In this document: piece after piece, positions 5,507 through 62,947 of the stretch
How the letters are laid out: each line of letters opens with the position of its first letter
Position numbering within the stretch: position 1 is the first letter of the stretch
Source of the DNA: Octopus bimaculoides
Taxonomy: Eukaryota
DNA: 64,000 nt
Direction: 5' to 3'
Assembly: GCF_001194135.2 (NCBI RefSeq)
Contig: NC_069001.1
Coordinates: 22,974,107-23,038,106, forward strand
Program-made: the position numbers and the translations under genes
The notes under the pieces: generated by a model
What the model was told of the DNA's origin: nothing
The model's input: only the letters and a program-made list of their open reading frames with translations
Database searches by the model: none

Positions 5507-5717
5507 TGTAATGNNNNNNNNNNNNNNNNNNNNNNNNNNNNNNNNNNNNNNNNNNNNNNNNNNNNNNNNNNNNNNNNNNNNNNNNNNNNNNNNNNNNNNN
5601 NNNNNNNNNNNNNNNNNNNNNNNNNNNNNNNNNNNNNNNNNNNNNNNNNNNNNNNNNNNNNNNNNNNNNNNNNNNNNNNNNNNNNNNNNNNNNNNNNNNN
5701 NNNNNNNNNNNNNNNNN

Positions 5718-5921: not shown

Positions 5922-6122
5922 TGAGGGAGTGCAGAAACGTTCCTGGATTTGGGTAAAAGAAAATACAAAAGGATTAGTTAATTATGGTTCCTCTCCCAGA
6001 TTTGCACACTCATTGCAACAATCCTTCGGTTTTTTAAACCCTATAAAAGAACTCAGAACGTTGGGCCTCCAGCCAGGCCTCTTCCACAATATCCTTAAAA
6101 CCAACAACTTTTCAGCACCTCA
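5922..6122 (+). mobile_element. Mariner-type MITE (~200-215 bp), copy 1
   Basis: Degenerate TIRs gagggagtgcagaaacgttcctgg / ccaacaacttttcagcacctc; internal sequence shared with 15749-15964 and 23016-23229. Confidence 0.75.
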
Positions 6123-6466
6123 TTGTGCATGCATTTATATATGTGTGCATATATGCATGTATTGAATGTATATAATTATTTGAAAGATTACATATTATAT
6201 ATGATTATGCATGTATATGTGTGTGAGTGCATGTATGTGTGTGTGTTCCTGTGTTTATACTCATACATATGCACATGCACAAAGTCATGCACAAAAATGC
6301 ACACACTTGCATTCTACTTTTCTTGTTACAATTTCTCTTTTACTTCAATACAAATGTCTGCATTAGCATCATCATTCTGTACTCTCTCACAGCATTTCTG
6401 ATTAGCTCTGCTCAGAATCTGTCTGTCCGTCTCCCTGTCTGTATACCTGTCTGTCTCTCCCTCTAC

Positions 6467-7819: not shown

Positions 7820-8205
7820 GACCTTTCAGGTGGGGCCCAGTTAGAATTTTCTTCAGGTTGAGTAACCATCCCACTCAAAAGGTCCCTGAATAAGGGTTGT
7901 TTAATGATGTTGAATAAAACACCCAGGTTTCCAGAGGTGGATTATTCAAATCCCCCAAAATTCCTCTTAACACATGGCCATTATGCCCCCCCCCACTAAT
8001 CCTGCTCATGATCAGAGATGCACTTATTATCAATCATTAAGGGACTTACTCAACTGATTAAGGTAAAGCAAATCAGTGGTATTGAGCAGAGTACTTGCTG
8101 TAGCCCCATCTTTTACACCAAGATAAAACATGTACATGATAACACTTCCAATCAGTTAAGATCAGAAGACATGAAAGCCACTGACTGGTTCTGCATCAAG
8201 GTACA
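7820..8205. repeat. Unclassified interspersed repeat (SINE-like body)
   Basis: GC-richer block (cagaggtggattattcaaa...cacttccaatcagttaagatcagaag) recognised as a common octopus repeat; single copy here. Confidence 0.4.
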
Positions 8206-8235
8206 TTATTAATATGATGATCATCATCATTATTG

Positions 8236-8449
8236 AGGTGGTGAGCTGGAAAAATCGTTCGCACGCCAGGCGAAATGCCTAGCAGTGTTTTGTCTATCTT
8301 TACATTCTGAGTTCAAATTCCGCCTAGGTCAACTTTGCCTTTCATGCTTTCAGGGTCGATAAATCAAGTACCAGTTGTATACTGGGGGCGGTCTAATCAA
8401 CTGGCCCCTTCCTCCAAAATTTCAGGCCTTGTTCCTGGAGTAGAAAAGA

Positions 8450-8505
<56 letters not shown>

Positions 8506-8968
8506 GATGGTGAGCTGGCAGAATCATTTGCATGTCAGGCAAAATGCTTAGCAGTATTTCGTCCATCTTCATGTTCTGAGTTCAAATTCTGCTGAGGTTG
8601 ACTTTACCTTTCATCCTTTCAGGGTCTATAAAATTAGTACCAATTATGCACTGGGGTCATTGTAATTGACTAGCCCCCACCCACTAGAATTTCAGGTCTT
8701 GTGCTTATAGTAGAAAGGATTAGTATTGTTGTTGTTGGTGTTGTTGTTAAGGTGGTGAGCAGGCAGACTCACCAGCATGCCAAAGAAGATGTTAAGCAGC
8801 ATTTTGTTTGTCTTGACATTCTAAGTTCAAATTCTACCAAGATAGACTTTGCTTTGAATTCTTCCAGGGCTGAGGAAATAAGTACCAATTGAGCCCTGGG
8901 GTGGGGGGTCGATGTAATTGAATCACACCCTACCCACCAAAATGTCAGGGTGTGTGTCTATAGAGCAA
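8236..8968 (+). mobile_element. Three head-to-tail SINE family C copies (~8236-8452, 8504-8716, 8750-8968)
   Basis: Each has ggtgagctggcagaatc...ctgagttcaaattc..aggtcgactttgcctttcatcctttc...aagtaccagtt...actggggtc; separated by (TAT)n/(TGT)n. Confidence 0.85.
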
Positions 8969-8989
8969 AGGCTTATGGATATAGTCGTT

Positions 8990-9005
8990 GGTGGTGGTCG
9001 TGCTG

Positions 9006-9039
<34 letters not shown>

Positions 9040-9730
9040 CAGTAGCAGCAGTAGCAGCAGTAGTGAGGTGTTTGCAGGGGTCGGGAGTATTGGTGGTATT
9101 GGCAATAACTTTGATGATTGTTGTTAAGCATTGGGGTTTGTGATGGCTATTGTACTGTCATTGTTCAACAAGTGAGTCTCATTCTGATGAAGGAAGAAAG
9201 AACAGCTGAGTCAACCCACTCTACTGATAAACGATGACATAGATAACAATGGTGGTGGTGGTGGTGGTAGTGGTGGTTGGGGGTAGTTGGGGGTGGTTGG
9301 GGGTAACGGTAGCTGAATGGGTTTTAGAAAGTAGTTATTAACTGTGGATGTATTTAGGAAGAATAGATATACTGTCACTGCTAATGATGAAGGTGGCAAT
9401 AATGGTGGTAGTGGTGATGGTGGCGTTAGTGGTGGTGCAGGATGATGGTTGTAGTGGGGATGGTGGTGGTTGTTGTGTGGTGATGGAAGTGTTAGTGGTG
9501 GAGGTGGTGTTAGTGGTGGTGATGGTGCTACTATTTATGGTGATGATGATGATGATGATGATGATAAAGGAGGCAGCTGTAATAATATTGATTTGAAGAC
9601 GAAGACAACTTTGATGACAACAGAGACATGATGATAATGATGATGATGATGATGACAATAGGTATGACGATGACACTGATGGTGATAGCTGTCATCGTAA
9701 TCTTATATATAATGCAGAAATAAGTCAAGT
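8990..9730. repeat. Trinucleotide low-complexity tract ((AGC)n, (GGT)n, (GAT)n)
   Basis: Read directly. Confidence 0.9.
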
Positions 9731-11594
9731 ATTAATTCTGATGATAAGGATTGCTGTCATAGTGACGTTATTAAGTTGTTACTATGATACATATCATAAT
9801 GTTCATATTATTGCTAACGATGTTCCTTGAAATGGTCATGTGTTTTTATTGATACTTTGGCTACCACATTGCTACCACTATTTCTGATAATGATACCAGT
9901 CATAAAAATAATAATTTCAACAAATTGAAATTTAGTGACGATTGAAATGATGGTATCGATTTTATGTATAACACGTTATGTATTTCACGTACTTTAATTA
10001 TATTTCATAAGTTAAAGATTGTGTGTGTGTGTGTCTGTATGTTCTTTTCTGTTTTTAAAGTTTTTAAGCTTTTCCTTTGAAGACGGAGCTGGTTTCTAAC
10101 AAAGCTCCATCTTTGAAATGAAGAAAAGGTAAACAATGTCATGCTTTTAATCTGAGAAAAGTCTCGCATAGTTTTCCTGTTCCACTTACAGATTGTATTT
10201 GTTATGTGTGAGTCAGTTGATTAATTTCTCTTTCTGAAAATCCAAGCTTATCCAGACTGATTGATTGGCAGGCAGGCAGGTGGGTGAGCGGGCAGGCAGG
10301 CGGGTGAGTAGGTAGGTAGGTAGGCAGGCAGGTATATTTGTCTGTCTGTTTGTCATTGTTTTGTTTTATTTCAAGATTTCTTGCCAATAGAGAAAGAACT
10401 GGTTTAGTTTCCAACCTTTATCCAAGGCTCTTTCATTGGAATTTCAACACCAGCAACAGGGTATTTTTGTATGTATGTATGTATGTATGTATGTATGTAT
10501 ACATTTAGGTATGTATGTATATATTATTTATGCAATCATGCATGCATGAATGAATGAAGCTACTAGCTTCCTTTTTTGTGTTGGTAAGAATTCTTTCACA
10601 TGTTTTTGGATTCCATCTCATTGCATGGGTTTTGACCAAGTGTTTCCTACTCTAGCTGTGGATTAACCAGTCATTTGGATGAAATTGTTACATGGAATTT
10701 ATGGAGAAATGTGTTGGGAGGAGTGTTCCAGTTCTTAGAAGGTGGTACACTTAATCTGTTTTTCAGTTTAACACTTCCATCTGTCCCTTGAGTATTGTTA
10801 GGCTCTGTTGCTAGCATTTGAATCAGATTCCTCATCTGAAGATAACTTTCTTTCTTCCTTGATCCAGCTTCAGAGATTCTGAAAATGGTCCAAAGGTTCT
10901 CCTTCCTTGTTTGACAAAGCTATTAAGAATTTAATCAGTCAATAGTGTAGGAAAATTAAATAGATTTCATTAATTAGGATCATTCTTCAAGATTCTGGTA
11001 CTAGATACCAGACTGAGATACTAGATTAATTGTGGCTTAACCCCATAAATCTTGATAGAATAAGTAATACACTTGTGCAGAAGTACATTCCATTGATTTT
11101 AATCATTCATAAAAAAATGTATGAACCCTAACCAGTCTGAGAAACCAATATTCTTTTGGGAATTTCAGTGATTAGACATTAGTTACATTGGAGCACCACA
11201 TTTAAGAGTTTAGTGAATCTTATCAACTATAAGCTTATATCAGTTTGTTGATTATTTTTACTATTCTTCATTTATTATATTCATTAATTTACATTTTTTA
11301 CATAAAAGGTGACAATCCAATTCATTAGTTTAAACGGGTAAACATAAATGAAAATAGTCACAGACACATACACACATGTTCATATAAACAGATATTCATA
11401 TATATATATACATAAACATGCAAAATGGACATCAACACTATTCCTCCATGTGATCAGCTTGAGAAATTGTTAGGATATTAAGATATTTTTCTTAACATGA
11501 AACCAGTGATAGCCTTAATATACAAAGAAATTCTATCCACCGACGTGGTGTTGAGCACTCATTTTCATCATTTGACATTTACATGTGTATATAT

Positions 11595-15596: not shown

Positions 15597-15748
15597 NNNN
15601 NNNNNNTATATATATATATATATATATTTATATATGTATGTATATATATATATGTAGGTAGGTATACATATATATGTATACACATCTCTAAGTGTGTGTG
15701 TATATATATATATGTGTGTGTGTGTTTATATACATATATGTAGGTATA

Positions 15749-17093: not shown

Positions 17094-17841
17094 TAATACA
17101 TATGCATAATATTGTTGGTGTTTAGCCCTTTCTCATGAGTTATGTTTCATTTTTGATGTGTCTTTAGAAAACTATTTAACTCCTTCTCATTCAGTCAATC
17201 TATCTCTAAACTATGAGGAATAAGGAATATGCATTTAGATGTATGTTGATTAAGATGCCTGCTGGAGCCCCTTGTGGGCAGTAAAGAAATATGATGCATG
17301 CTGTAGCCCCTTGTGGGCAGTAAAGAAATATGATGCATGTTGATTTTAGTCCGAAGACAACTCTGATTAAGCAAACATATGATCACATACATTCCAGCTA
17401 CAACCATCATGTTTTTCTTCAGAGACACGTTACACCACGAAGTACCTTATCAAGAGTGCTTATCTTTTCTTAGATATTAGAGAGAATGGGCTGCTGTTAC
17501 TAGCAGGTGACACAACCATGTAGAGATGGCTTGTTCATTGGCTGAAACATTCCATGAACTTCTGTTTTTAATTTTACTGTAATGTTTCTTTTCATGATAT
17601 ATTTAATTACCAAATTTATAGTCTATGTCATGCTGAAGATTCTAAAAAAGGATGAGATAGTACTATAGATGAGTACCACTAACTAGAAATTCCAAGAACT
17701 TCACCATAGATAATAATAAAAAAAAGAAGAATTTAGATTAGATACATAAATGTTATTATATATATGAGCTCTTCATATCCTTTTATGCCTCATGTTGTGA
17801 GATGTTAACCTCTTCTTGTACTAACAGCCATCTAGAGGGTG

Positions 17842-52935: not shown

Positions 52936-53111
52936 CTTCATAAGACTTGTGTTCATCTATTGATCTCTTTTGCCAAACTGCTAAGTGAAGGAAGCATAAA
53001 CAAGCCTACACCTGTTGTCAAGTGACAAGGGAATAAACACAGCAAGCTCAGACAAATACATACACACACACACACACACACACATGATAAGTTTCCATAC
53101 AGTTTCTTATT

Positions 53112-53362
53112 TCTTTATTGCCCACAAGGGGCTAAACATAGAGGGGACAAACAAGGACGGACAAAGGGATTAAGTCGATTACATCGACCCCAGTGCGTAA
53201 CTGGTACTTAATTTATCGACCCCAGTGCGTAACTGGTACTTAATTTATCGACCCCGAAAGGATGAAAGGCAAAGTCAACCTTGGCGGAATTTGAACTCAG
53301 AACGTAACGGCAGACGAAATACCGCTAAGCATCTCGCCTGGCATGCTAATGTTTCTGCCAGC
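53112..53362 (-). mobile_element. SINE family C, low-divergence, with ~36-bp internal tandem duplication
   Basis: (atcgaccccagtgcgtaactggtacttaattt) twice; CpGs retained. Confidence 0.88.
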
Positions 53363-54716
53363 TATTTGAAACTGTTTCCATACAGTTTCTGTTCCATACA
53401 AGTTTCCATACAGTTTCTGTTAACCAAATTCATTTGCAAGGCATTGGATCAGCTGAAGGCTATTCAGTGAGACTGAATCCCAAAATGACATTGTTGCAAG
53501 GCAAACTTCTTAACCTTAGTAATACTTCCACTTATATGAGTAATGATTGTGAAATTCTGCTGTTAAAATGAACAAAATTTGCCATGTTCCCATTGGAGAT
53601 GGATATAGGGCAGATTTTGTATGTGTTTGAGTAAATAGGAAAGCAAAATGGTGTTTTCCGCATAGCAGTACACATTGTTAATTGCCAATACAGACTATCA
53701 TCCATCATGTTACATACATACATACGTATATATATAGAAGATGGATTAAAACAATTGTAGTGATTAATACATATCTTCCGTCTTTCATCTCTCTCATTAA
53801 TCAAATATAAATATATATATATATATTGTTCAAATCTCATCAATAAACTTGTTACTTTTCTCTTATCTCAGATGAGTGTTTGTCATGTTTGCAGTAATTT
53901 ATATAAATTGTTTTAATAGACAATTCATAATGAGAAATTAAAAGTGGTGATTAAGGATTAGACAGGTTTGTGTCCATAACTTTATTTGATTCAATCTTAT
54001 GGCATAGGAGACAATATATATTCCATCCTTTCTTTATAACTCAATGTCTGCAAATTAGAGAGAAGTACAACATATTGTTTCACAATGTGCTAACAGTTAA
54101 ACTTATAAAAAGAAGGTAAGGTAAATCTTGCTCACACAAGGAACAAATAAAATTGGAAAGGTTTAAAGACAAAATTCACAAATATGTTCTTGTGTGTGTG
54201 TGTTTATGTGTGTGTACCCTTGTGTGATTTTACATATGTGAATGTATTCCATCCAGTGAGAGATAAATATCAATTTAAATACTCAACCCAAAGAGCTACC
54301 AATAGTTTCATGCTTTTATGCTACTTGAAAAGACTTTGACATATTTTCTGTTATTTTGTTCAAAACCAGTTGTATTTAATGAGCTTTCTGCAATCAGGGA
54401 GGATGAGGATCTTAGCTTTCTTCACTTCATTGCTTTTTTCTTGTTCCATTTTTTACACAAAGCTTCTTTTTCTTATTTTCTTACTGATATCCACAGATAT
54501 GCTGTCTCACTGATAATGCTTTCTTGTATGTATTCTTAAATGTATTTTTCCCAAATAGATTGCACTTCATATTAGAAGCTCTGAGGAAACTGTAAGGTGT
54601 TCTTCAGGCACCCACCTCTGAGTCCACCACATCTTATAATAAAAATAACTGTAAGCTAATGAAGTACGTTAAATAATTGTTTGCAGGTGTGTCTGTGTGG
54701 TAAGAAGCTTGCTTCC

Positions 54717-56158
54717 GCGCATGCGTCGGGTTATTTACTGTCTGGATTTTGTTAGAGTTGGACGTAGATTTTTGTGTTGCTTAGAAGATGTATTCAGACC
54801 TTGATGGGTCTGAGTTGTCGTCGGAGGAGGAGGAGCTGGTAAGGGCGGTTATAAAGATGGACGGAGTGTTGAAGACAAGGAGTTTTGCTAAAGCCACAGA
54901 GATGAAGCGAAGGAAGCTGGACTTGGCTGGTCTGAAGGAGTATGAGAATATAGCTCAGAAGGTGGGCGACAACATGAAGTTGTCACTCCCCAAAGGAATT
55001 ATGGAGAGGATGGAGAAGAAAACGATCACCTGTAAGGTGTACTCGTTGAAAGGAAAAAAGGCAGAACAGGTGGAGACAGAAGTGGAAAAGGAGCTGAGGG
55101 AATGAACAAAGGAGATAACGTACATAACCAAAGAAAGAAGATATTTAATTTAGGACAGTAGAGGAGGCAAGGAGGCTGGTGAGTGTCGGGGTGAAAACGA
55201 GGAAGTAGTGCTTCTGCCCACATACCTTGGAAGAAAGACTTCCAAGGTGAGGGTAGTAGCAATTCCACCAGATATAGAAGTGGCTTGGGTAGCAGCAGCT
55301 GTCCTTGTTGGAAGCGAGAAGGTGGGTGTCCTCCAAACCACAGAAACGGAAGAAGGAGGGTGGAAAGGAAAGACATTTGAACCCATTATTCAGACGGAGG
55401 AGGGTCAACTGGAGAACTTGGCAGAGACGGTGACATTGGGGGAAATTGTGCTGAGGATGTGGGTAGAGGGCAGAGTACCAAGTTGTTTTAAATGTGGCCA
55501 AAAGGGCCACATTAGAGCTTACTACCCTCTACAGATGACAATGGTTGAGAAAACAGTTGTGGAAATGGAAGAGAAAAGAGAAGAAGAAAAGACAGACGGA
55601 GGAAAGGAGAAAAAGGAGGAAGAATGGAAAGTTACAGAGAGCAGAACGAGAAAGAAGAAAGAAAAAACACTGAGTATGATGTGGTACCCCAGTCCAACTT
55701 CATTCCACCCTAGACCACTCAGACCCACCCTCCCCATACAGACACCAAACCCACCCACTCCATTTCCCCACAAGAAAAAACAAAAGAAAAAGAAAGAACA
55801 GACACCGCAAAATTTAGAAGCCCCCCCCCTCCTGGTGAAAAGGTTATGAATGCATGGAGGAGAGAATGATGTCACTAAGTGATGGAGAAAGGGGAAAAAG
55901 GATTGGATTGAAGGAGAAAAAGGACTTAGGACCCAGAGGTGGTGAGTGATGTAACTCAGTGTGGGATGAGTAGAACACTCTTCATAATATCATTTTCAGA
56001 TATCATTCATGTTATATTTTAATTTGATTTTGATGTTCATTTTCATGTGTCATTGATTATATTATATTTCATTTTTATATTTTTAATTGTTATATGTCCC
56101 CACATGTGTTGTAGTGTCCCCCTCTATGTAATGGTTTTATGGCAATTTAAAAGAAATA
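54717..56158 (+). mobile_element. ORF1-only non-LTR retroelement (HAL1-like / Tx1-L1-derived), 1442 bp, 15-bp TSD
   Basis: TSD aagaagcttgcttcc at 54702-54716 and 56159-56173; 71-bp 5' UTR; ~350-codon ORF1-like region; A-rich 3' end with aataaa; no EN/RT motifs. Confidence 0.8.
54788..55849 (+). pseudogene. Disrupted ORF1/Gag-like nucleic-acid-binding protein (RRM-like region, CCHC knuckle, basic/Pro-rich tail)
   Basis: ORFs 54788-55105 and 55208-55849 share a frame; TGA at 55103 and a short frameshifted segment (FRTVEEARRLVSVGVK) between them; KVRVVAIPPDI and VEGRVPSCFKCGQKGHIRAYYP (last Cys replaced by Tyr). Confidence 0.72.
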
Positions 56159-56516
56159 AAGAAGCTTGCTTCCCAACCACATGGTTCCAGGTACAGTCTC
56201 ACTGCATGGAATCATGGGAAAGTGTCTTCTACTATTGTCTCTGGCCAACCAAAGCCTTGTGAGTGGAAACTGAAAGAGCCCACCGTATATGTGTGTGTGT
56301 GCACGCATGTGTGTGTGTATACCCTTTCCATCACTTGTCAACCGATTTTAGTGTGTTTATGTTCCAATAATTTAGCAGTTCAGCAAAAACGACTGACAGA
56401 ATAAGTACTAGGCTTATAAAGAATAAGTTCTGGGGTCGATTTGTTCAACTAAAGGCTGTGCTCCAGCATGGCCACAATCAAATGACTGAAACAAGTAAAA
56501 GACTCCTTTCTCCTCA

Positions 56517-59161: not shown

Positions 59162-60544
59162 TAGTCTATGTACTAGCACTAACATCTATACATTTATACT
59201 TCCATACTTTTATTATCGTATTAATTTTTACTGTCAATTTATAAATTTGACTTCTAAATTTTTTTTAAAGTAACATTTCTATGATGAATGTTTCTTTATA
59301 TGACTTTTTTTAATGTAATATATTATTTAATTTAAATCTTAGATTAAAATCTTAGATATATTAAGATGGTATATGCCTCACAGCATGGATTTGGACGGGT
59401 TCTGAGTTGTAGAGTGGCGGTTCGTCTCTAAATTAGTTACATACATATATATTATATATTACGAAACCCAGTGTAATATTATACTGATTTTTGCCTCTAA
59501 AGTTGGAATAAATTCTTAATCCCTAATATTATTACTATATATATNNNNNNNNNNNNNNNNNNNNNNNNNNNNNNNNNNNNNNNNNNNNNNNNNNNNNNNN
59601 NNNNNNNNNNNNNNNNNNNNNNNNNNNNNNNNNNNNNNNNNNNNNNNNNNNNNNNTATATATATATATATCAAAAACAGTATCAAAGGTCCTGCCAAGAT
59701 GTTTGCTCCTAAGGCTGGTTTCCTGGACTCTGTGGCCTCACTGGATGGGATGCCAGTTCACAGGGCTACTCATTTTTGCCAGATGAATGGACTGGAATAA
59801 ATGGGAAATGATGTGTTCTGTTCAAGATCCAGAAACTTATACCACAACATTATGATCATGTGTGCAACACCAGCTTCACTGCTAATCTTGCACCTATGCA
59901 CACACACGCACACACATACACACACACGTGAATGTATTTTTTCATGTTTTTACATTTGTTTTTTTCCTATTTGGACATCTGCTAAATGAATACATTATCA
60001 CCTTACTATGAAAAGCTTTTCGACCAAATGGCCTTCCTGCTACTAAGCCTTAAATGTTTTTCAAACAAAAGGTCTTTTAACCATATTTCCACATCTCTTC
60101 TGAAGTTCAGAGCCAGTAGATTACCTTTTGACTGGTAAAATGACAACACCACCATGATTTATAGCTTAACAATTTTCTGAGAAGTGCAAATAGAAACACA
60201 CATATATAATGTATGATGGTGATGGTGGTGTGTTCGTGTGTGCGTGTTGTACATGTATGCTTGGACACATATATGAGTATGTATGTAAATATGTATGTAT
60301 TACTAGTCAAGGAGTCATGAAGTGATACAAACTGATGACTTTTGAAATGTTTTGAAAGTGTAATTTGTATATATTCACCCGATCAATAGGTTTCTTTTGC
60401 ACATGATGTAATATCTCTGTTGATTAGTTCGAAACAGCTGTAGTGAATGTACTGTTATTCATCTGTTGTTATTTCGATATATATATATATAAAATATAAA
60501 AGTTTCTTCTGAGCCATTGACCAATAAGCTTGATTTCCTATATT

Positions 60545-62145: not shown

Positions 62146-62947
62146 NNNNNNNNNNNNNNNNNNNNNNNNNNNNNNNNNNNNNNNNNNNNNNNNNNNNNNN
62201 NNNNNNNNNNNNNNNNNNNNNNNNNNNNNNNNNNNNNNNNNNNNNNNNNNNNNNNNNNNNNNNNNNNNNNNNNNNNNNNNNNNNNNNNNNNNNNNNNNNN
62301 NNNNNNNNNNNNNNNNNNNNNNNNNNNNNNNNNNNNNNNNNNNNNNNNNNNNNNNNNNNNNNNNNNNNNNNNNNNNNNNNNNNNNNNNNNNNNNNNNNNN
62401 NNNNNNNNNNNNNNNNNNNNNNNNNNNNNNNNNNNNNNNNNNNNNNNNNNNNNNNNNNNNNNNNNNNNNNNNNNNNNNNNNNNNNNNNNNNNNNNNNNNN
62501 NNNNNNNNNNNNNNNNNNNNNNNNNNNNNNNNNNNNNNNNNNNNNNNNNNNNNNNNNNNNNNNNNNNNNNNNNNNNNNNNNNNNNNNNNNNNNNNNNNNN
62601 NNNNNNNNNNNNNNNNNNNNNNNNNNNNNNNNNNNNNNNNNNNNNNNNNNNNNNNNNNNNNNNNNNNNNNNNNNNNNNNNNNNNNNNNNNNNNNNNNNNN
62701 NNNNNNNNNNNNNNNNNNNNNNNNNNNNNNNNNNNNNNNNNNNNNNNNNNNNNNNNNNNNNNNNNNNNNNNNNNNNNNNNNNNNNNNNNNNNNNNNNNNN
62801 NNNNNNNNNNNNNNNNNNNNNNNNNNNNNNNNNNNNNNNNNNNNNNNNNNNNNNNNNNNNNNNNNNNNNNNNNNNNNNNNNNNNNNNNNNNNNNNNNNNN
62901 NNNNNNNNNNNNNNNNNNNNNNNNNNNNNNNNNNNNNNNNNNNNNNN
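62146..62947. other. Assembly gap (largest); other gaps at 5514-5717, ~15600, ~40460-40489, 51122-51548, 59545-59655
   Basis: N runs, mostly flanked by (TA)n. Confidence 0.99.

What the first reader, a model, noticed from the sequence alone, without database searches (positions are those of the whole stretch)
54717..56158. Self-contained ORF1-only retroelement (HAL1-like) with an exact 15-bp TSD
Seen: a 1442-bp insert bounded by identical aagaagcttgcttcc repeats. It has a short 5' UTR, one ~350-codon disrupted frame with an RRM-like segment and a C-x2-C-x4-H knuckle, about 300 bp of 3' UTR and an A-rich end. There is no endonuclease, RT, LTR or TIR. Established: long TSDs plus an A-rich tail are TPRT signatures, and ORF1-only 'half-L1' (HAL1) elements are known in some animals. 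Inference: this is a non-autonomous family that keeps its own ORF1 chaperone and borrows ORF2 from an L1/Tx1 partner. Having the ORF1 start and the 3' tail inside one TSD rules out simple 5' truncation. I do not know of such a family described from cephalopods.
Basis: partly seen in the sequence, partly recalled or inferred. Interest (0 to 1): 0.85.

Follow-up and report, generated by a model that had tools for sequence, protein, structure and literature searches.

The report
Dead ORF1-only LINE derivative in octopus
This 1.4-kb insert is a decayed copy of an octopus retrotransposon lineage that keeps only the first (RNA-binding) gene of an L1/Tx1-like LINE, has lost the reverse transcriptase gene, and probably borrows that enzyme from full-length relatives whose 3' end it shares; it is real, but an expected kind of element.

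Summary
Window 54717-56158 is a 1442-bp insert between two exact 15-bp AAGAAGCTTGCTTCC copies. It interrupts one copy of an abundant octopus SINE; removing the insert and one repeat restores a continuous SINE, so the repeat is a true target-site duplication.

The insert has a 71-nt 5' UTR, a 353-codon ORF1-type frame and a 309-nt 3' region. The frame is broken by 2 stops and 2 frameshifts, and the last Cys of its CCHC knuckle is now Tyr. It has no endonuclease or reverse transcriptase.

The interpretation (HAL1-like, ORF1-only, non-autonomous) is supported and extended:
- **More copies.** Four further ORF1-only copies lie at unrelated loci in O. bimaculoides, O. sinensis and O. vulgaris. Three have their own duplications, and two have intact ORFs of 384 and 379 aa.
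- **Partner.** Full-length relatives carry the homologous ORF1 followed by an APE + RT + zf-RVT ORF2 that best matches human L1 ORF2p.
- **Shared tail.** All share a specific 3' tail, not poly(A), which also ends a second abundant octopus SINE.
- **Protein.** The predicted fold is a tandem RRM plus knuckle.

This copy is dead. I rate it a new member of a known kind (HAL1, HeT-A). Three family insertions at the identical SINE position suggest a target preference.

The parts
54682..54716 (+). 5' part of the interrupted SINE copy ('SINE1' head). It ends with target-site duplication copy 1 (54702-54716, AAGAAGCTTGCTTCC).
   Evidence: the reconstructed empty site aligns across the junction to at least 10 other SINE1 copies.
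54717..54787 (+). 5' UTR of the ORF1-only element (71 nt, GT-rich). Its first ~14 nt (GCGCATGCGTCGGG) resemble the 5' end of the L001 copy (CGTGCGTCGTGG).
   Evidence: read directly from the sequence.
54788..55849 (+). Decayed ORF1 of 353 codons plus stop. In order: N-terminal helical region, two RRM-like domains, one CCHC knuckle, and a basic/Pro-rich tail.
   Evidence: octopus homologues, E = 6e-62; 598 representative proteins; AF2 model, core pLDDT 85-95; Foldseek top hits are tandem-RRM proteins.
55103..55105 (+). In-frame TGA, disabling mutation 1.
55145..55210 (+). Damaged RRM1 core. It holds an in-frame TAG (55151-55153) and a frameshift near 55149 into the frame that encodes FRTVEEARRLVSVGVK. 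A second frameshift near 55204 returns to the original frame. About 4-6 codons (GTVVVQ in relatives) are missing.
55484..55525 (+). CCHC zinc knuckle, CFKCGQKGHIRAY, with the last Cys mutated to Tyr.
   Evidence: zf-CCHC 17.8 bits, below the 20.8 cut-off. Relatives have an intact CFKCGQKGHIRAHC. PDB profile hits are to nucleocapsid knuckles.
55938..55965 (+). Relic of the ORF1/ORF2 junction: GGTGGTGAGTGATGTAACTCAGTGTGGG. It is homologous to GGTAAGTGATGAACTACATTTGTGTTGG in the full-length LINE, that is, the ORF2 ATG plus about 5-7 codons. ORF2 is missing after it.
   Evidence: read by eye from the sequences.
55966..56158 (+). 3' UTR proper, ending in the conserved family tail (56083-56158). The tail includes a degraded 4-bp hairpin (56132-56144) and the terminus GGCAATTTAAAAGAAATA (56141-56158).
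   Evidence: (nhmmer E = 8e-15).
56159..56173 (+). Target-site duplication copy 2 (AAGAAGCTTGCTTCC).
56174..56433 (+). Remainder of the interrupted SINE1 copy.

Best explanation
The insert is an old, inactivated copy of a non-autonomous, ORF1-only (delta-ORF2) derivative of an L1/Tx1-like LINE family found in octopods.

Shown:
- It was inserted by a mechanism that leaves a 15-bp target-site duplication, inside a SINE.
- Its ORF is homologous to the ORF1 of full-length LINEs. That ORF1 has a tandem RRM fold plus one CCHC knuckle.
- It keeps the first few codons of ORF2 and then jumps to the LINE-type 3' UTR.
- Its last ~60-70 nt are the tail shared by the full-length LINEs, by other ORF1-only copies and by a second abundant SINE.
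- The same architecture recurs at independent loci in three Octopus species. Two of those ORFs are intact, and dN/dS is about 0.25-0.3.

Inferred:
- The element is transcribed from its own 5' UTR.
- Its RNA is coated in cis by its own ORF1p.
- The ORF2 protein (endonuclease + RT) of a full-length partner recognises the shared 3' hairpin and A-rich terminus, nicks the target (here T|AAGAAG) and copies the RNA by target-primed reverse transcription.

This copy can no longer make ORF1p.
For: - TSD and empty site.
- No EN or RT in the insert or the window.
- ORF1 homologues, which where named are from Octopus and Argonauta only.
- Full-length partners with ORF1 followed by ORF2:
  - L003: Exo_endo_phos + RVT_1 + zf-RVT. 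Its ORF2 matches human L1 ORF2p at E = 1e-61 over EN + RT, against 1e-25 for R2.
  - L004 and L006.
- Further ORF1-only copies with their own TSDs:
  - L002: intact 384-aa ORF.
  - L012: intact 379-aa ORF.
  - L001 and L010.
- Shared tail across LINE, ORF1-only copies and SINE2.
- Hairpin: 92.6% of cells paired against 80% in shuffles (0 of 500 reach the observed value) and 19-47% when partners are slid. Two of its 4 pairs show compensatory changes.
- Purifying selection, window versus L002: pN 0.33-0.375 against pS 0.68.
- Fold: AF2 core pLDDT 85-95, with Foldseek top hits Sxl, HuD, hnRNP A1 UP1 and IMP3 RRM12.
Against: - Only five ORF1-only copies were seen. They were sampled through annotated gene models, so copy number, length distribution and consensus are unknown.
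- No copy of the window's own subfamily was recovered with its DNA context. The closest proteins, P0001 and P0002 (68-79% identity), have no contig on record.
- ORF1 core distances place full-length L003 and L004 (43% identity to the window) between the window/L001/L002 group (52-55%) and the L010 copy (31%). The delta-ORF2 state may therefore have arisen more than once, and part of the measured purifying selection could have acted in full-length ancestors.
- Trans-mobilisation and transcription are untested.
- The hairpin is only 4 bp, and in the window copy it is partly broken.
Confidence: 0.85

Rival explanations
1. Sporadic deletion products. Each ORF2-less copy would be an independent, dead-on-arrival by-product of a full-length LINE. 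A plausible route is RT template switching or recombination between the similar GGTRAG...GTGGG motifs at the ORF1/ORF2 junction and at the start of the 3' UTR. On this view there is no self-propagating ORF1-only lineage.
For: - All breakpoints lie just after the conserved junction motif, and a similar motif occurs at the start of the L003 3' UTR.
- ORF1 distances interleave full-length and ORF2-less copies.
- One copy (L001) has a further internal deletion, so deletions do occur in this family.
Against: - The window, L002 and L001 copies are collinear with each other downstream of the junction. By ORF1 core identity they are mutually the closest among copies of known architecture.
- Two ORF2-less copies have fully intact ORFs of 379-384 aa.
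- The window-type tail variant (TTTATGGCAAATTAAAATGAAATA) recurs in an independent 5'-truncated copy in L005. This suggests, but does not prove (its parent could also be full-length), that this subfamily produced more than one insertion.
Confidence: 0.1
2. Processed pseudogene or retrocopy of a host gene, for example a ZCCHC-type RNA-binding gene, or members of a domesticated ORF1-derived host gene family.
For: - The anatomy (5' UTR, single ORF, 3' UTR, TSD) is also that of a retrocopy.
- Several relatives are annotated as genes, such as LOC106871568 and LOC118767527.
- Two ORFs are intact.
Against: - The same ORF sits directly upstream of an APE/RT ORF2 in L003, L004 and L006.
- There is no poly(A) tail or poly(A) signal. 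The 3' end is instead the LINE/SINE tail.
- There are hundreds of diverged, mostly fragmentary relatives: 598 representatives at 50% clustering.
- The intact copies themselves carry TSDs and the LINE tail.
Confidence: 0.03
3. Composite or chance arrangement. The two 15-mers would come from two separate SINE copies, and the sequence between them would not be a discrete insertion.
For: The 15-mer is a SINE motif that occurs 7 times in the window.
Against: - The left piece contains only the first ~35 nt of the SINE and ends exactly with the motif. The right piece starts exactly with the motif and continues for more than 260 nt.
- Joined together, the two pieces form one uninterrupted SINE.
- The insert's ends coincide with the family's 5' start and 3' terminus seen at other loci.
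Confidence: 0.02

Closest known systems
HAL1 ('half-L1') elements of mammals (Smit 1999; Bao & Jurka 2010, as cited in PMC5753468)
   Same: Both are non-autonomous LINE derivatives that retain ORF1 and lack ORF2. Both are flanked by TSDs and presumed to use the partner's ORF2p in trans. HAL1 is reported to have arisen several times independently, and that may also be true here.
   Different: - HAL1 derives from mammalian L1, whose ORF1p is of the coiled-coil/RRM/CTD type, and it ends in poly(A).
- The octopus element derives from an L1/Tx1-like LINE whose ORF1p has a tandem RRM plus a CCHC knuckle.
- It ends in a specific non-poly(A) tail with a small hairpin, and that tail is also carried by a SINE.
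- It is not a member of the HAL1 families themselves.
HeT-A of Drosophila telomeres (Jockey-clade element encoding only Gag/ORF1; my own knowledge, see also PMC13534243)
   Same: Both are ORF1-only non-LTR retrotransposons that depend on an RT supplied by related elements.
   Different: HeT-A belongs to a different LINE clade. It targets chromosome ends and has a telomere-maintenance role for the host. The octopus copies are interspersed and have TSDs.
Stringent LINE/SINE partnerships sharing a 3' tail, e.g. eel UnaL2/UnaSINE1 (my own knowledge); and internally deleted LINE derivatives such as RIME/ingi and NARTc/L1Tc in trypanosomes (my own knowledge)
   Same: - A 3' tail of about 45-70 nt with a stem-loop is shared by the autonomous LINE and its non-autonomous passengers.
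- The passenger keeps both LINE ends and lacks the internal coding sequence.
   Different: Here the passenger still carries a complete ORF1, which has been under purifying selection. RIME, NARTc and SINEs are non-coding.
L1/Tx1-group LINEs ('L1-Tx1' families annotated in O. vulgaris, PMC13282606)
   Same: - The partner ORF2 has APE + RVT_1 + zf-RVT and matches human L1 ORF2p best.
- ORF1 is of the RRM + CCHC type.
- Recurrent insertion at one site of a repeat recalls the target specificity known for Tx1-clade elements (my own knowledge).
   Different: The window element itself has no ORF2. Assignment to Tx1 as opposed to L1 proper was not resolved, because no reference phylogeny was available.

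Membership tests
ORF1-only (HAL1-like) non-autonomous LINE derivative | Encodes a protein homologous to the ORF1 of an autonomous LINE. | tested here: met
   Window ORF against the ORF1 of L003 (P0007), L004 and L006 (P0040), each followed by an APE/RT ORF2.
ORF1-only (HAL1-like) non-autonomous LINE derivative | Lacks ORF2 (no endonuclease, no RT) between one pair of TSDs. | tested here: met
   tblastn with the L003 ORF2 finds nothing in the window. Pfam finds only a weak zf-CCHC match. TSD shown.
ORF1-only (HAL1-like) non-autonomous LINE derivative | Shares its termini with the autonomous partner. | tested here: met
   The 3' tail is shared with the L003 and L004 LINEs. The 5' end is only inconclusive: the UTRs are GT-rich and the first ~14 nt resemble the L001 copy.
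ORF1-only (HAL1-like) non-autonomous LINE derivative | A family: several copies with the same architecture at independent sites, each with its own TSD. | tested here: met
   L001, L002, L010 and L012. Genome-wide copy number could not be obtained.
ORF1-only (HAL1-like) non-autonomous LINE derivative | ORF1 kept functional in the lineage (intact ORFs, purifying selection). | tested here: met
   Intact ORFs of 384 aa (L002) and 379 aa (L012). dN/dS is about 0.25-0.29 with dS saturated. The window copy itself is broken.
ORF1-only (HAL1-like) non-autonomous LINE derivative | Mobilised in trans by the partner's ORF2p. | not testable with these tools
   Needs a retrotransposition assay.
Mammalian HAL1 proper / L1-type 'relaxed' retroposition | 3' poly(A) tail preceded by a polyadenylation signal. 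| tested here: not met
   The insert ends in ...GGCAATTTAAAAGAAATA. No A-run and no AATAAA/ATTAAA signal lies upstream, and the terminus is conserved among relatives.
RRM + CCHC type LINE ORF1p ('type I' in Khazina & Weichenrieder 2009; my own knowledge) | At least one RRM fold followed by one or more CCHC zinc knuckles. | tested here: met
   - AF2 model: residues ~56-134 and ~141-227 are beta-alpha-beta domains.
- Foldseek: tandem-RRM proteins, probability ~1.0, E = 3e-4.
- Knuckle.
L1/Tx1-group LINE (for the partner) | ORF2 with an N-terminal APE endonuclease, an RT, and a C-terminal Cys-rich (zf-RVT) domain; closest to L1 ORF2p. | tested here: met
   Tx1 versus L1 proper was not resolved.
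Processed pseudogene of a host gene | An intron-containing parent gene, poly(A) tail, single or few copies. | tested here: not met
   No poly(A) tail; a LINE tail instead; hundreds of diverged relatives; ORF2 directly downstream in full-length copies.
tRNA-derived SINE (for the target, SINE1) | A recognisable tRNA-like head. | tested here: inconclusive
   ARAGORN finds no tRNA in the window. Rfam gives no tRNA match on SINE1 copies. A/B-box-like motifs were seen by eye only.

The most novel reading that the evidence does not exclude
Octopods may harbour an old, diversified set of 'semi-autonomous' ORF1-only retroelements. These would keep their own RRM-CCHC chaperone under selection and parasitise the ORF2p of L1/Tx1-like LINEs through a 3' hairpin tail that is also used by one of the most abundant octopus SINEs. 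The result would be a three-tier LINE / half-LINE / SINE network. These elements, or their partner's endonuclease, would also show a marked preference for one exact position in the head of another SINE (GGT|AAGAAGCTTGCTTCC). Three independent insertions were found at that position.
Probability: 0.35. Interest if true: 0.6.

Novelty: new member of a known kind. Interest (0 to 1): 0.42.

Why it matters
ORF1-only LINE derivatives are well documented mainly in mammals (HAL1) and at Drosophila telomeres (HeT-A). A molluscan example with a different ORF1 type and a tail-specific ('stringent') partner has three uses:

- **Generality.** It shows that the 'half-LINE' strategy evolves repeatedly, and it supplies two intact natural ORFs (L002 and L012).
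- **A testable system.** It allows a test of whether ORF1p supplied in cis helps a passenger RNA compete for ORF2p.
- **Annotation.** Several octopus gene models are in fact these elements or chimeras with them, including 'EPM2A-interacting 1-like', 'ABC transporter F family member 4-like' and a C2H2 zinc-finger protein. The shared tail also links a LINE family to a major octopus SINE.

It does not change any general principle.

Tried and rejected
- The closest proteins, P0002 and P0003, have no contig on record, so the window's own subfamily could not be examined in DNA.
- A global MAFFT alignment of the insert with L001 misplaced the 3' end. It was replaced by local comparison.
- Pfam on the decayed protein gave only a sub-threshold zf-CCHC match.
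- A profile search against PDB sequences matched only the knuckle. A structure prediction plus Foldseek was needed to show the RRMs.
- Three loci could not be scored as ORF1-only or full-length. L007 and L011 end before the end of ORF1, and L005 is interrupted by an assembly gap.
- The idea that the delta-ORF2 form arises by splicing from the conserved AG|GTAAGT junction was rejected, because the GTAAGT and about 20 nt downstream of it are retained in the ORF1-only copies.
- A candidate fourth insertion at the SINE1 site (L002, 14261-14275, minus strand) proved unconvincing on inspection.
- ARAGORN and Rfam did not support a tRNA-like head for SINE1. The SCARNA7 hits are far below threshold and lie in GT-rich repeats.
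- The species of the window was not determined.
Full report
**1. The observation**

The two AAGAAGCTTGCTTCC copies lie at 54702-54716 and 56159-56173, enclosing a 1442-bp insert at 54717-56158. The 15-mer is a segment of an abundant SINE. It has 7 matches at up to 2 mismatches in the window, against 0.1 expected. I therefore tested whether the repeats belong to one SINE or to two.

Joining the left flank to the right flank, with one repeat copy removed, gives a sequence that aligns without interruption across the junction. It does so against at least 10 other copies of that SINE in the window (listing). The left piece is only the first ~35 nt of the SINE. The right piece carries the rest. So one SINE copy was split by an insertion that duplicated 15 bp of target.

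**2. Anatomy of the insert**

- The 5' UTR is 71 nt (54717-54787).
- The ORF starts at ATG 54788 and runs in one frame for 353 codons to TGA 55847-55849.
- It is interrupted by TGA at 55103-55105 and TAG at 55151-55153.
- Comparison with relatives shows that the RRM1 core (FRTVEEARRLVSVGVK) is read in another frame. Two compensating frameshifts lie near 55149 and 55204, and about 4-6 codons are missing.
- The knuckle at 55484-55525 reads CFKCGQKGHIRAY. Relatives have ...HIRAHC, so the last zinc ligand is lost.
- The remaining 309 nt are non-coding.
- The full-length partner's ORF2 has no tblastn match anywhere in the 64-kb window.
- No second copy of the insert exists in the window.

**3. What the protein is**

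Searches returned relatives that, where named, come only from octopods: O. bimaculoides, O. sinensis, O. vulgaris and Argonauta hians. The exhaustive profile search found 598 representative proteins at E <= 1e-3, most of them short fragments.

None of the ten long hits I scanned has an endonuclease or RT domain. The long ones are chimeric gene models, fused to C2H2 zinc fingers, LDL-receptor repeats, an RGS domain or a Helitron helicase.

An AlphaFold2 model built on a 33-sequence alignment has pLDDT 85-95 over residues ~40-240. Its best Foldseek matches in the PDB are tandem-RRM proteins: Sxl, HuD, hnRNP A1 UP1, IMP3 RRM12 and NONO/SFPQ (probability ~1.0, E ~3e-4). The sequence profile matches retroviral nucleocapsid and ZCCHC8 knuckles.

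More precisely, the protein has two RRM-like domains followed by one CCHC knuckle. This is the architecture described for many non-mammalian LINE ORF1 proteins (my own knowledge: Khazina & Weichenrieder 2009).

**4. Full-length partners**

- **L003 (O. vulgaris OX597840.1).** It holds three head-to-tail LINE copies with a period of about 5.28 kb. In each, the homologous ORF1 (P0007) plus an extra C-terminal domain is followed by the motif GGTAAGTGATG, then by an ORF2 of about 1130 aa. ORF2 has Exo_endo_phos, RVT_1 and zf-RVT domains. It matches human L1 ORF2p at E = 1e-61 over EN + RT, against 1e-25 for R2 proteins.
- **L004 (O. bimaculoides CM046601.1).** It shows the same ORF1 / GGTAAGACATG / ORF2-start arrangement. 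Its 3' end is visible after an assembly gap.
- **L006.** This metagenome contig shows ORF1 (P0040) followed by the start of ORF2.
- O. vulgaris is reported to contain 13 recently active 'L1-Tx1' families (PMC13282606).

**5. Other ORF1-only copies**

| Locus | Species | Element | ORF | TSD | Notes |
|---|---|---|---|---|---|
| L002 | O. sinensis | 9458-11055 (1598 bp) | intact, 384 aa (9575-10729) | 19 bp, CAGAAA[C/T]GTTAGCACGCCG | Sits inside a second SINE type |
| L012 | O. vulgaris | 7916-9651 (1736 bp) | intact, 379 aa | 11 bp, TGCTGGGTTCG | |
| L001 | O. bimaculoides | ~9774-10671 | broken | 13 bp, 12/13 match | Has a further internal deletion |
| L010 | O. sinensis | 5'-truncated | partial, but with the complete C-terminal domain | none seen | Two nested SINE insertions, then 3' UTR and tail, no ORF2 |

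In all except L001, where the further deletion removes it, the junction motif (GGTAAGCGATG, GGTAAGTATAT..., GAGTGAGTAAAAT...; in the window GGTGAGTGATG) and about 20 nt of the ORF2 start are retained. The sequence then continues into the 3' UTR. Downstream of the junction, the window, L002 and L001 copies are collinear.

Among the loci I could score, five (counting the window) are ORF1-only and three are full-length. L005, L007 and L011 could not be scored, because of an assembly gap or because the contig ends too early.

**6. The 3' end**

The last ~60-70 nt are homologous among ORF1-only copies and full-length LINEs. In the window they read ...GTCCCCACATGTGTTGTAGTGTCCCCCTCTATGTAATGGTTTTATGGCAATTTAAAAGAAATA (nhmmer E values 1e-8 to 1e-16).

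The last ~45 nt also form the 3' end of a second abundant octopus SINE. Examples are window 53110-53151 and 41952-41993 on the minus strand, both with their own TSDs.

Just before the A-rich terminus there is a 4-bp hairpin (GCCC-CTTGT-GGGC). Over 17 tails:
- 92.6% of cells pair, against 80% in shuffles (0 of 500 shuffles reach the observed value).
- Only 19-47% pair when the partners are slid.
- Two of the four pairs show double-sided changes, for example TGCC/GGCA.
- L012, which was not in that alignment, has AGGC/GCCT.

This is the pattern of tail-specific ('stringent') LINE/SINE partnerships, not of poly(A)-dependent L1 retroposition. In the window copy the hairpin is partly degraded.

**7. 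Selection and origins**

Between the window ORF (frame-corrected) and the intact L002 ORF, pN is 0.33-0.375 and pS is 0.68, giving dN/dS of about 0.25-0.29. Because dS is saturated, the ratio is if anything overestimated.

In the RRM2-to-knuckle core, the window's identity to other copies is as follows:

| Compared with | Architecture | Identity |
|---|---|---|
| P0002 | unknown | 68% |
| L001 | ORF1-only | 55% |
| L002 | ORF1-only | 52% |
| L003, L004 | full-length | 43% |
| L010 | ORF1-only | 31% |

The window, L001 and L002 copies look like one ORF1-only lineage. The L010 type may represent a separate loss of ORF2, much as HAL1 is reported to have arisen several times in mammals (PMC5753468). 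With so few copies, this stays an inference.

**8. Mechanism**

- **Shown:** the TSD-generating insertion, LINE ORF1 homology, absence of ORF2, the shared tail, recurrence of the architecture, and intact ORFs elsewhere.
- **Inferred:** transcription from the 5' UTR, binding by the element's own ORF1p in cis, recognition of the 3' hairpin and terminus by the partner's ORF2p, a nick at T|AAGAAG, and target-primed reverse transcription.

The window copy is a fossil.

**9. Rivals**

- **Sporadic dead-on-arrival deletions (about 0.1).** Not excluded, but disfavoured by the collinear junctions, the intact ORFs and a second insertion carrying the window-type tail variant.
- **Host-gene retrocopy or domesticated gene (about 0.03).** Contradicted by ORF2 lying downstream in full-length copies and by the LINE tail.
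- **Chance or two-SINE arrangement.** Rejected.

**10. Comparison and novelty**

The element works like HAL1, but it is not a member of the mammalian HAL1 families. It has a different ORF1 type and no poly(A) tail, and it carries a tail-specific 3' end. HeT-A is a second ORF1-only analogue.

My literature searches found no description of ORF1-only LINE derivatives in cephalopods. The searched library is incomplete, and Repbase/Dfam could not be queried.

Verdict: real, correctly interpreted, and a new member of a known kind. Interest is moderate.

Noticed in passing
window 54702-54716 / 56159-56173; L005 7063-7197 (minus strand); L007 1079-1096: Three independent insertions of this family sit at the identical position of the SINE1 head (GTGTGGT|AAGAAGCTTGCTTCC|CAACC). 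They are the window copy (15-bp TSD), a 135-bp 5'-truncated copy with the window-type tail (3' junction identical, TSD only AAG), and a copy whose ORF is only ~37-39% identical (5' junction identical). Random insertion cannot explain this. It suggests a target preference of the partner's endonuclease, or TPRT priming by AAGAA microhomology with the tail ...AAAGAAATA. The other copies (L001, L002, L012) are inserted elsewhere.
   Followed up: partly
window 53110-53360 (minus strand), 41952-42200 (minus strand); L002 ~6000-6165; L010 10445-10675: A second abundant octopus SINE (GGCGAGCTGGCAGAAACGTTAGCACGCCGGGCGAAATGC...) ends in the same ~45-nt tail as the L1/Tx1-like LINE (...GTCCCCTCTATGTTTAGCCCCTTGTGGGCAATAAAGAAATA). 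This identifies that LINE family as its likely mobilising partner.
   Followed up: partly
L003 4700-19300 (O. vulgaris OX597840.1): Three full-length LINE copies lie head to tail with a period of about 5.28 kb. Each starts right after the tail of the previous one, and their ORF2 proteins are 90-99.6% identical. This could be tandem duplication or repeated insertion at the element's own 3' end.
   Followed up: no
L003 11332-11345; L004 10869-10879; L006 2062-2071; L012 9151-9171; L002 10900-10910; window 55938-55965: The ORF1/ORF2 junction carries a conserved (A)GGTAAGT motif, a perfect 5' splice-donor-like sequence, just before the ORF2 ATG. It is retained even in most of the ORF1-only copies. 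Its function is unknown; it could be an ORF2 translation signal or a U1-binding site.
   Followed up: no
window 17242-17340: Two tandem ~39-bp units each contain the hairpin-plus-terminus part of the SINE/LINE tail (AGCCCCTTGTGGGCAGTAAAGAAATATGATGCATGC). They look like a small satellite derived from the tail.
   Followed up: no
proteins P0034, P0001, P0045, P0094 (no window coordinates): Several octopus gene models are chimeras that contain fragments of this ORF1. P0034 is a 1135-aa Helitron-like protein (Helitron_like_N + PIF1) with an ORF1 fragment at residues 476-625. P0001 is the ORF1 N-terminus fused to C2H2 zinc fingers. P0045 and P0094 are fusions with LDL-receptor repeats and an RGS domain. 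Other family ORFs carry misleading names, such as 'EPM2A-interacting 1-like' and 'ABC transporter F family member 4-like'.
   Followed up: partly
L005 10740-10982; L010 10753-11007; proteins P0003, P0010, P0021, P0038, P0040: Many family ORF1s have an additional conserved C-terminal domain of about 80 aa (...YRKLKE.FGD.VDPPGV.VEF.ELPPV.EL...) with no Pfam match. It is largely lost in the window copy.
   Followed up: no
window 5514-5717, 15597-15606, 40460-40489, 51122-51548, 59545-59655, 62146-62947: There are six runs of N (assembly gaps) in the window. None touches the insert.
   Followed up: yes
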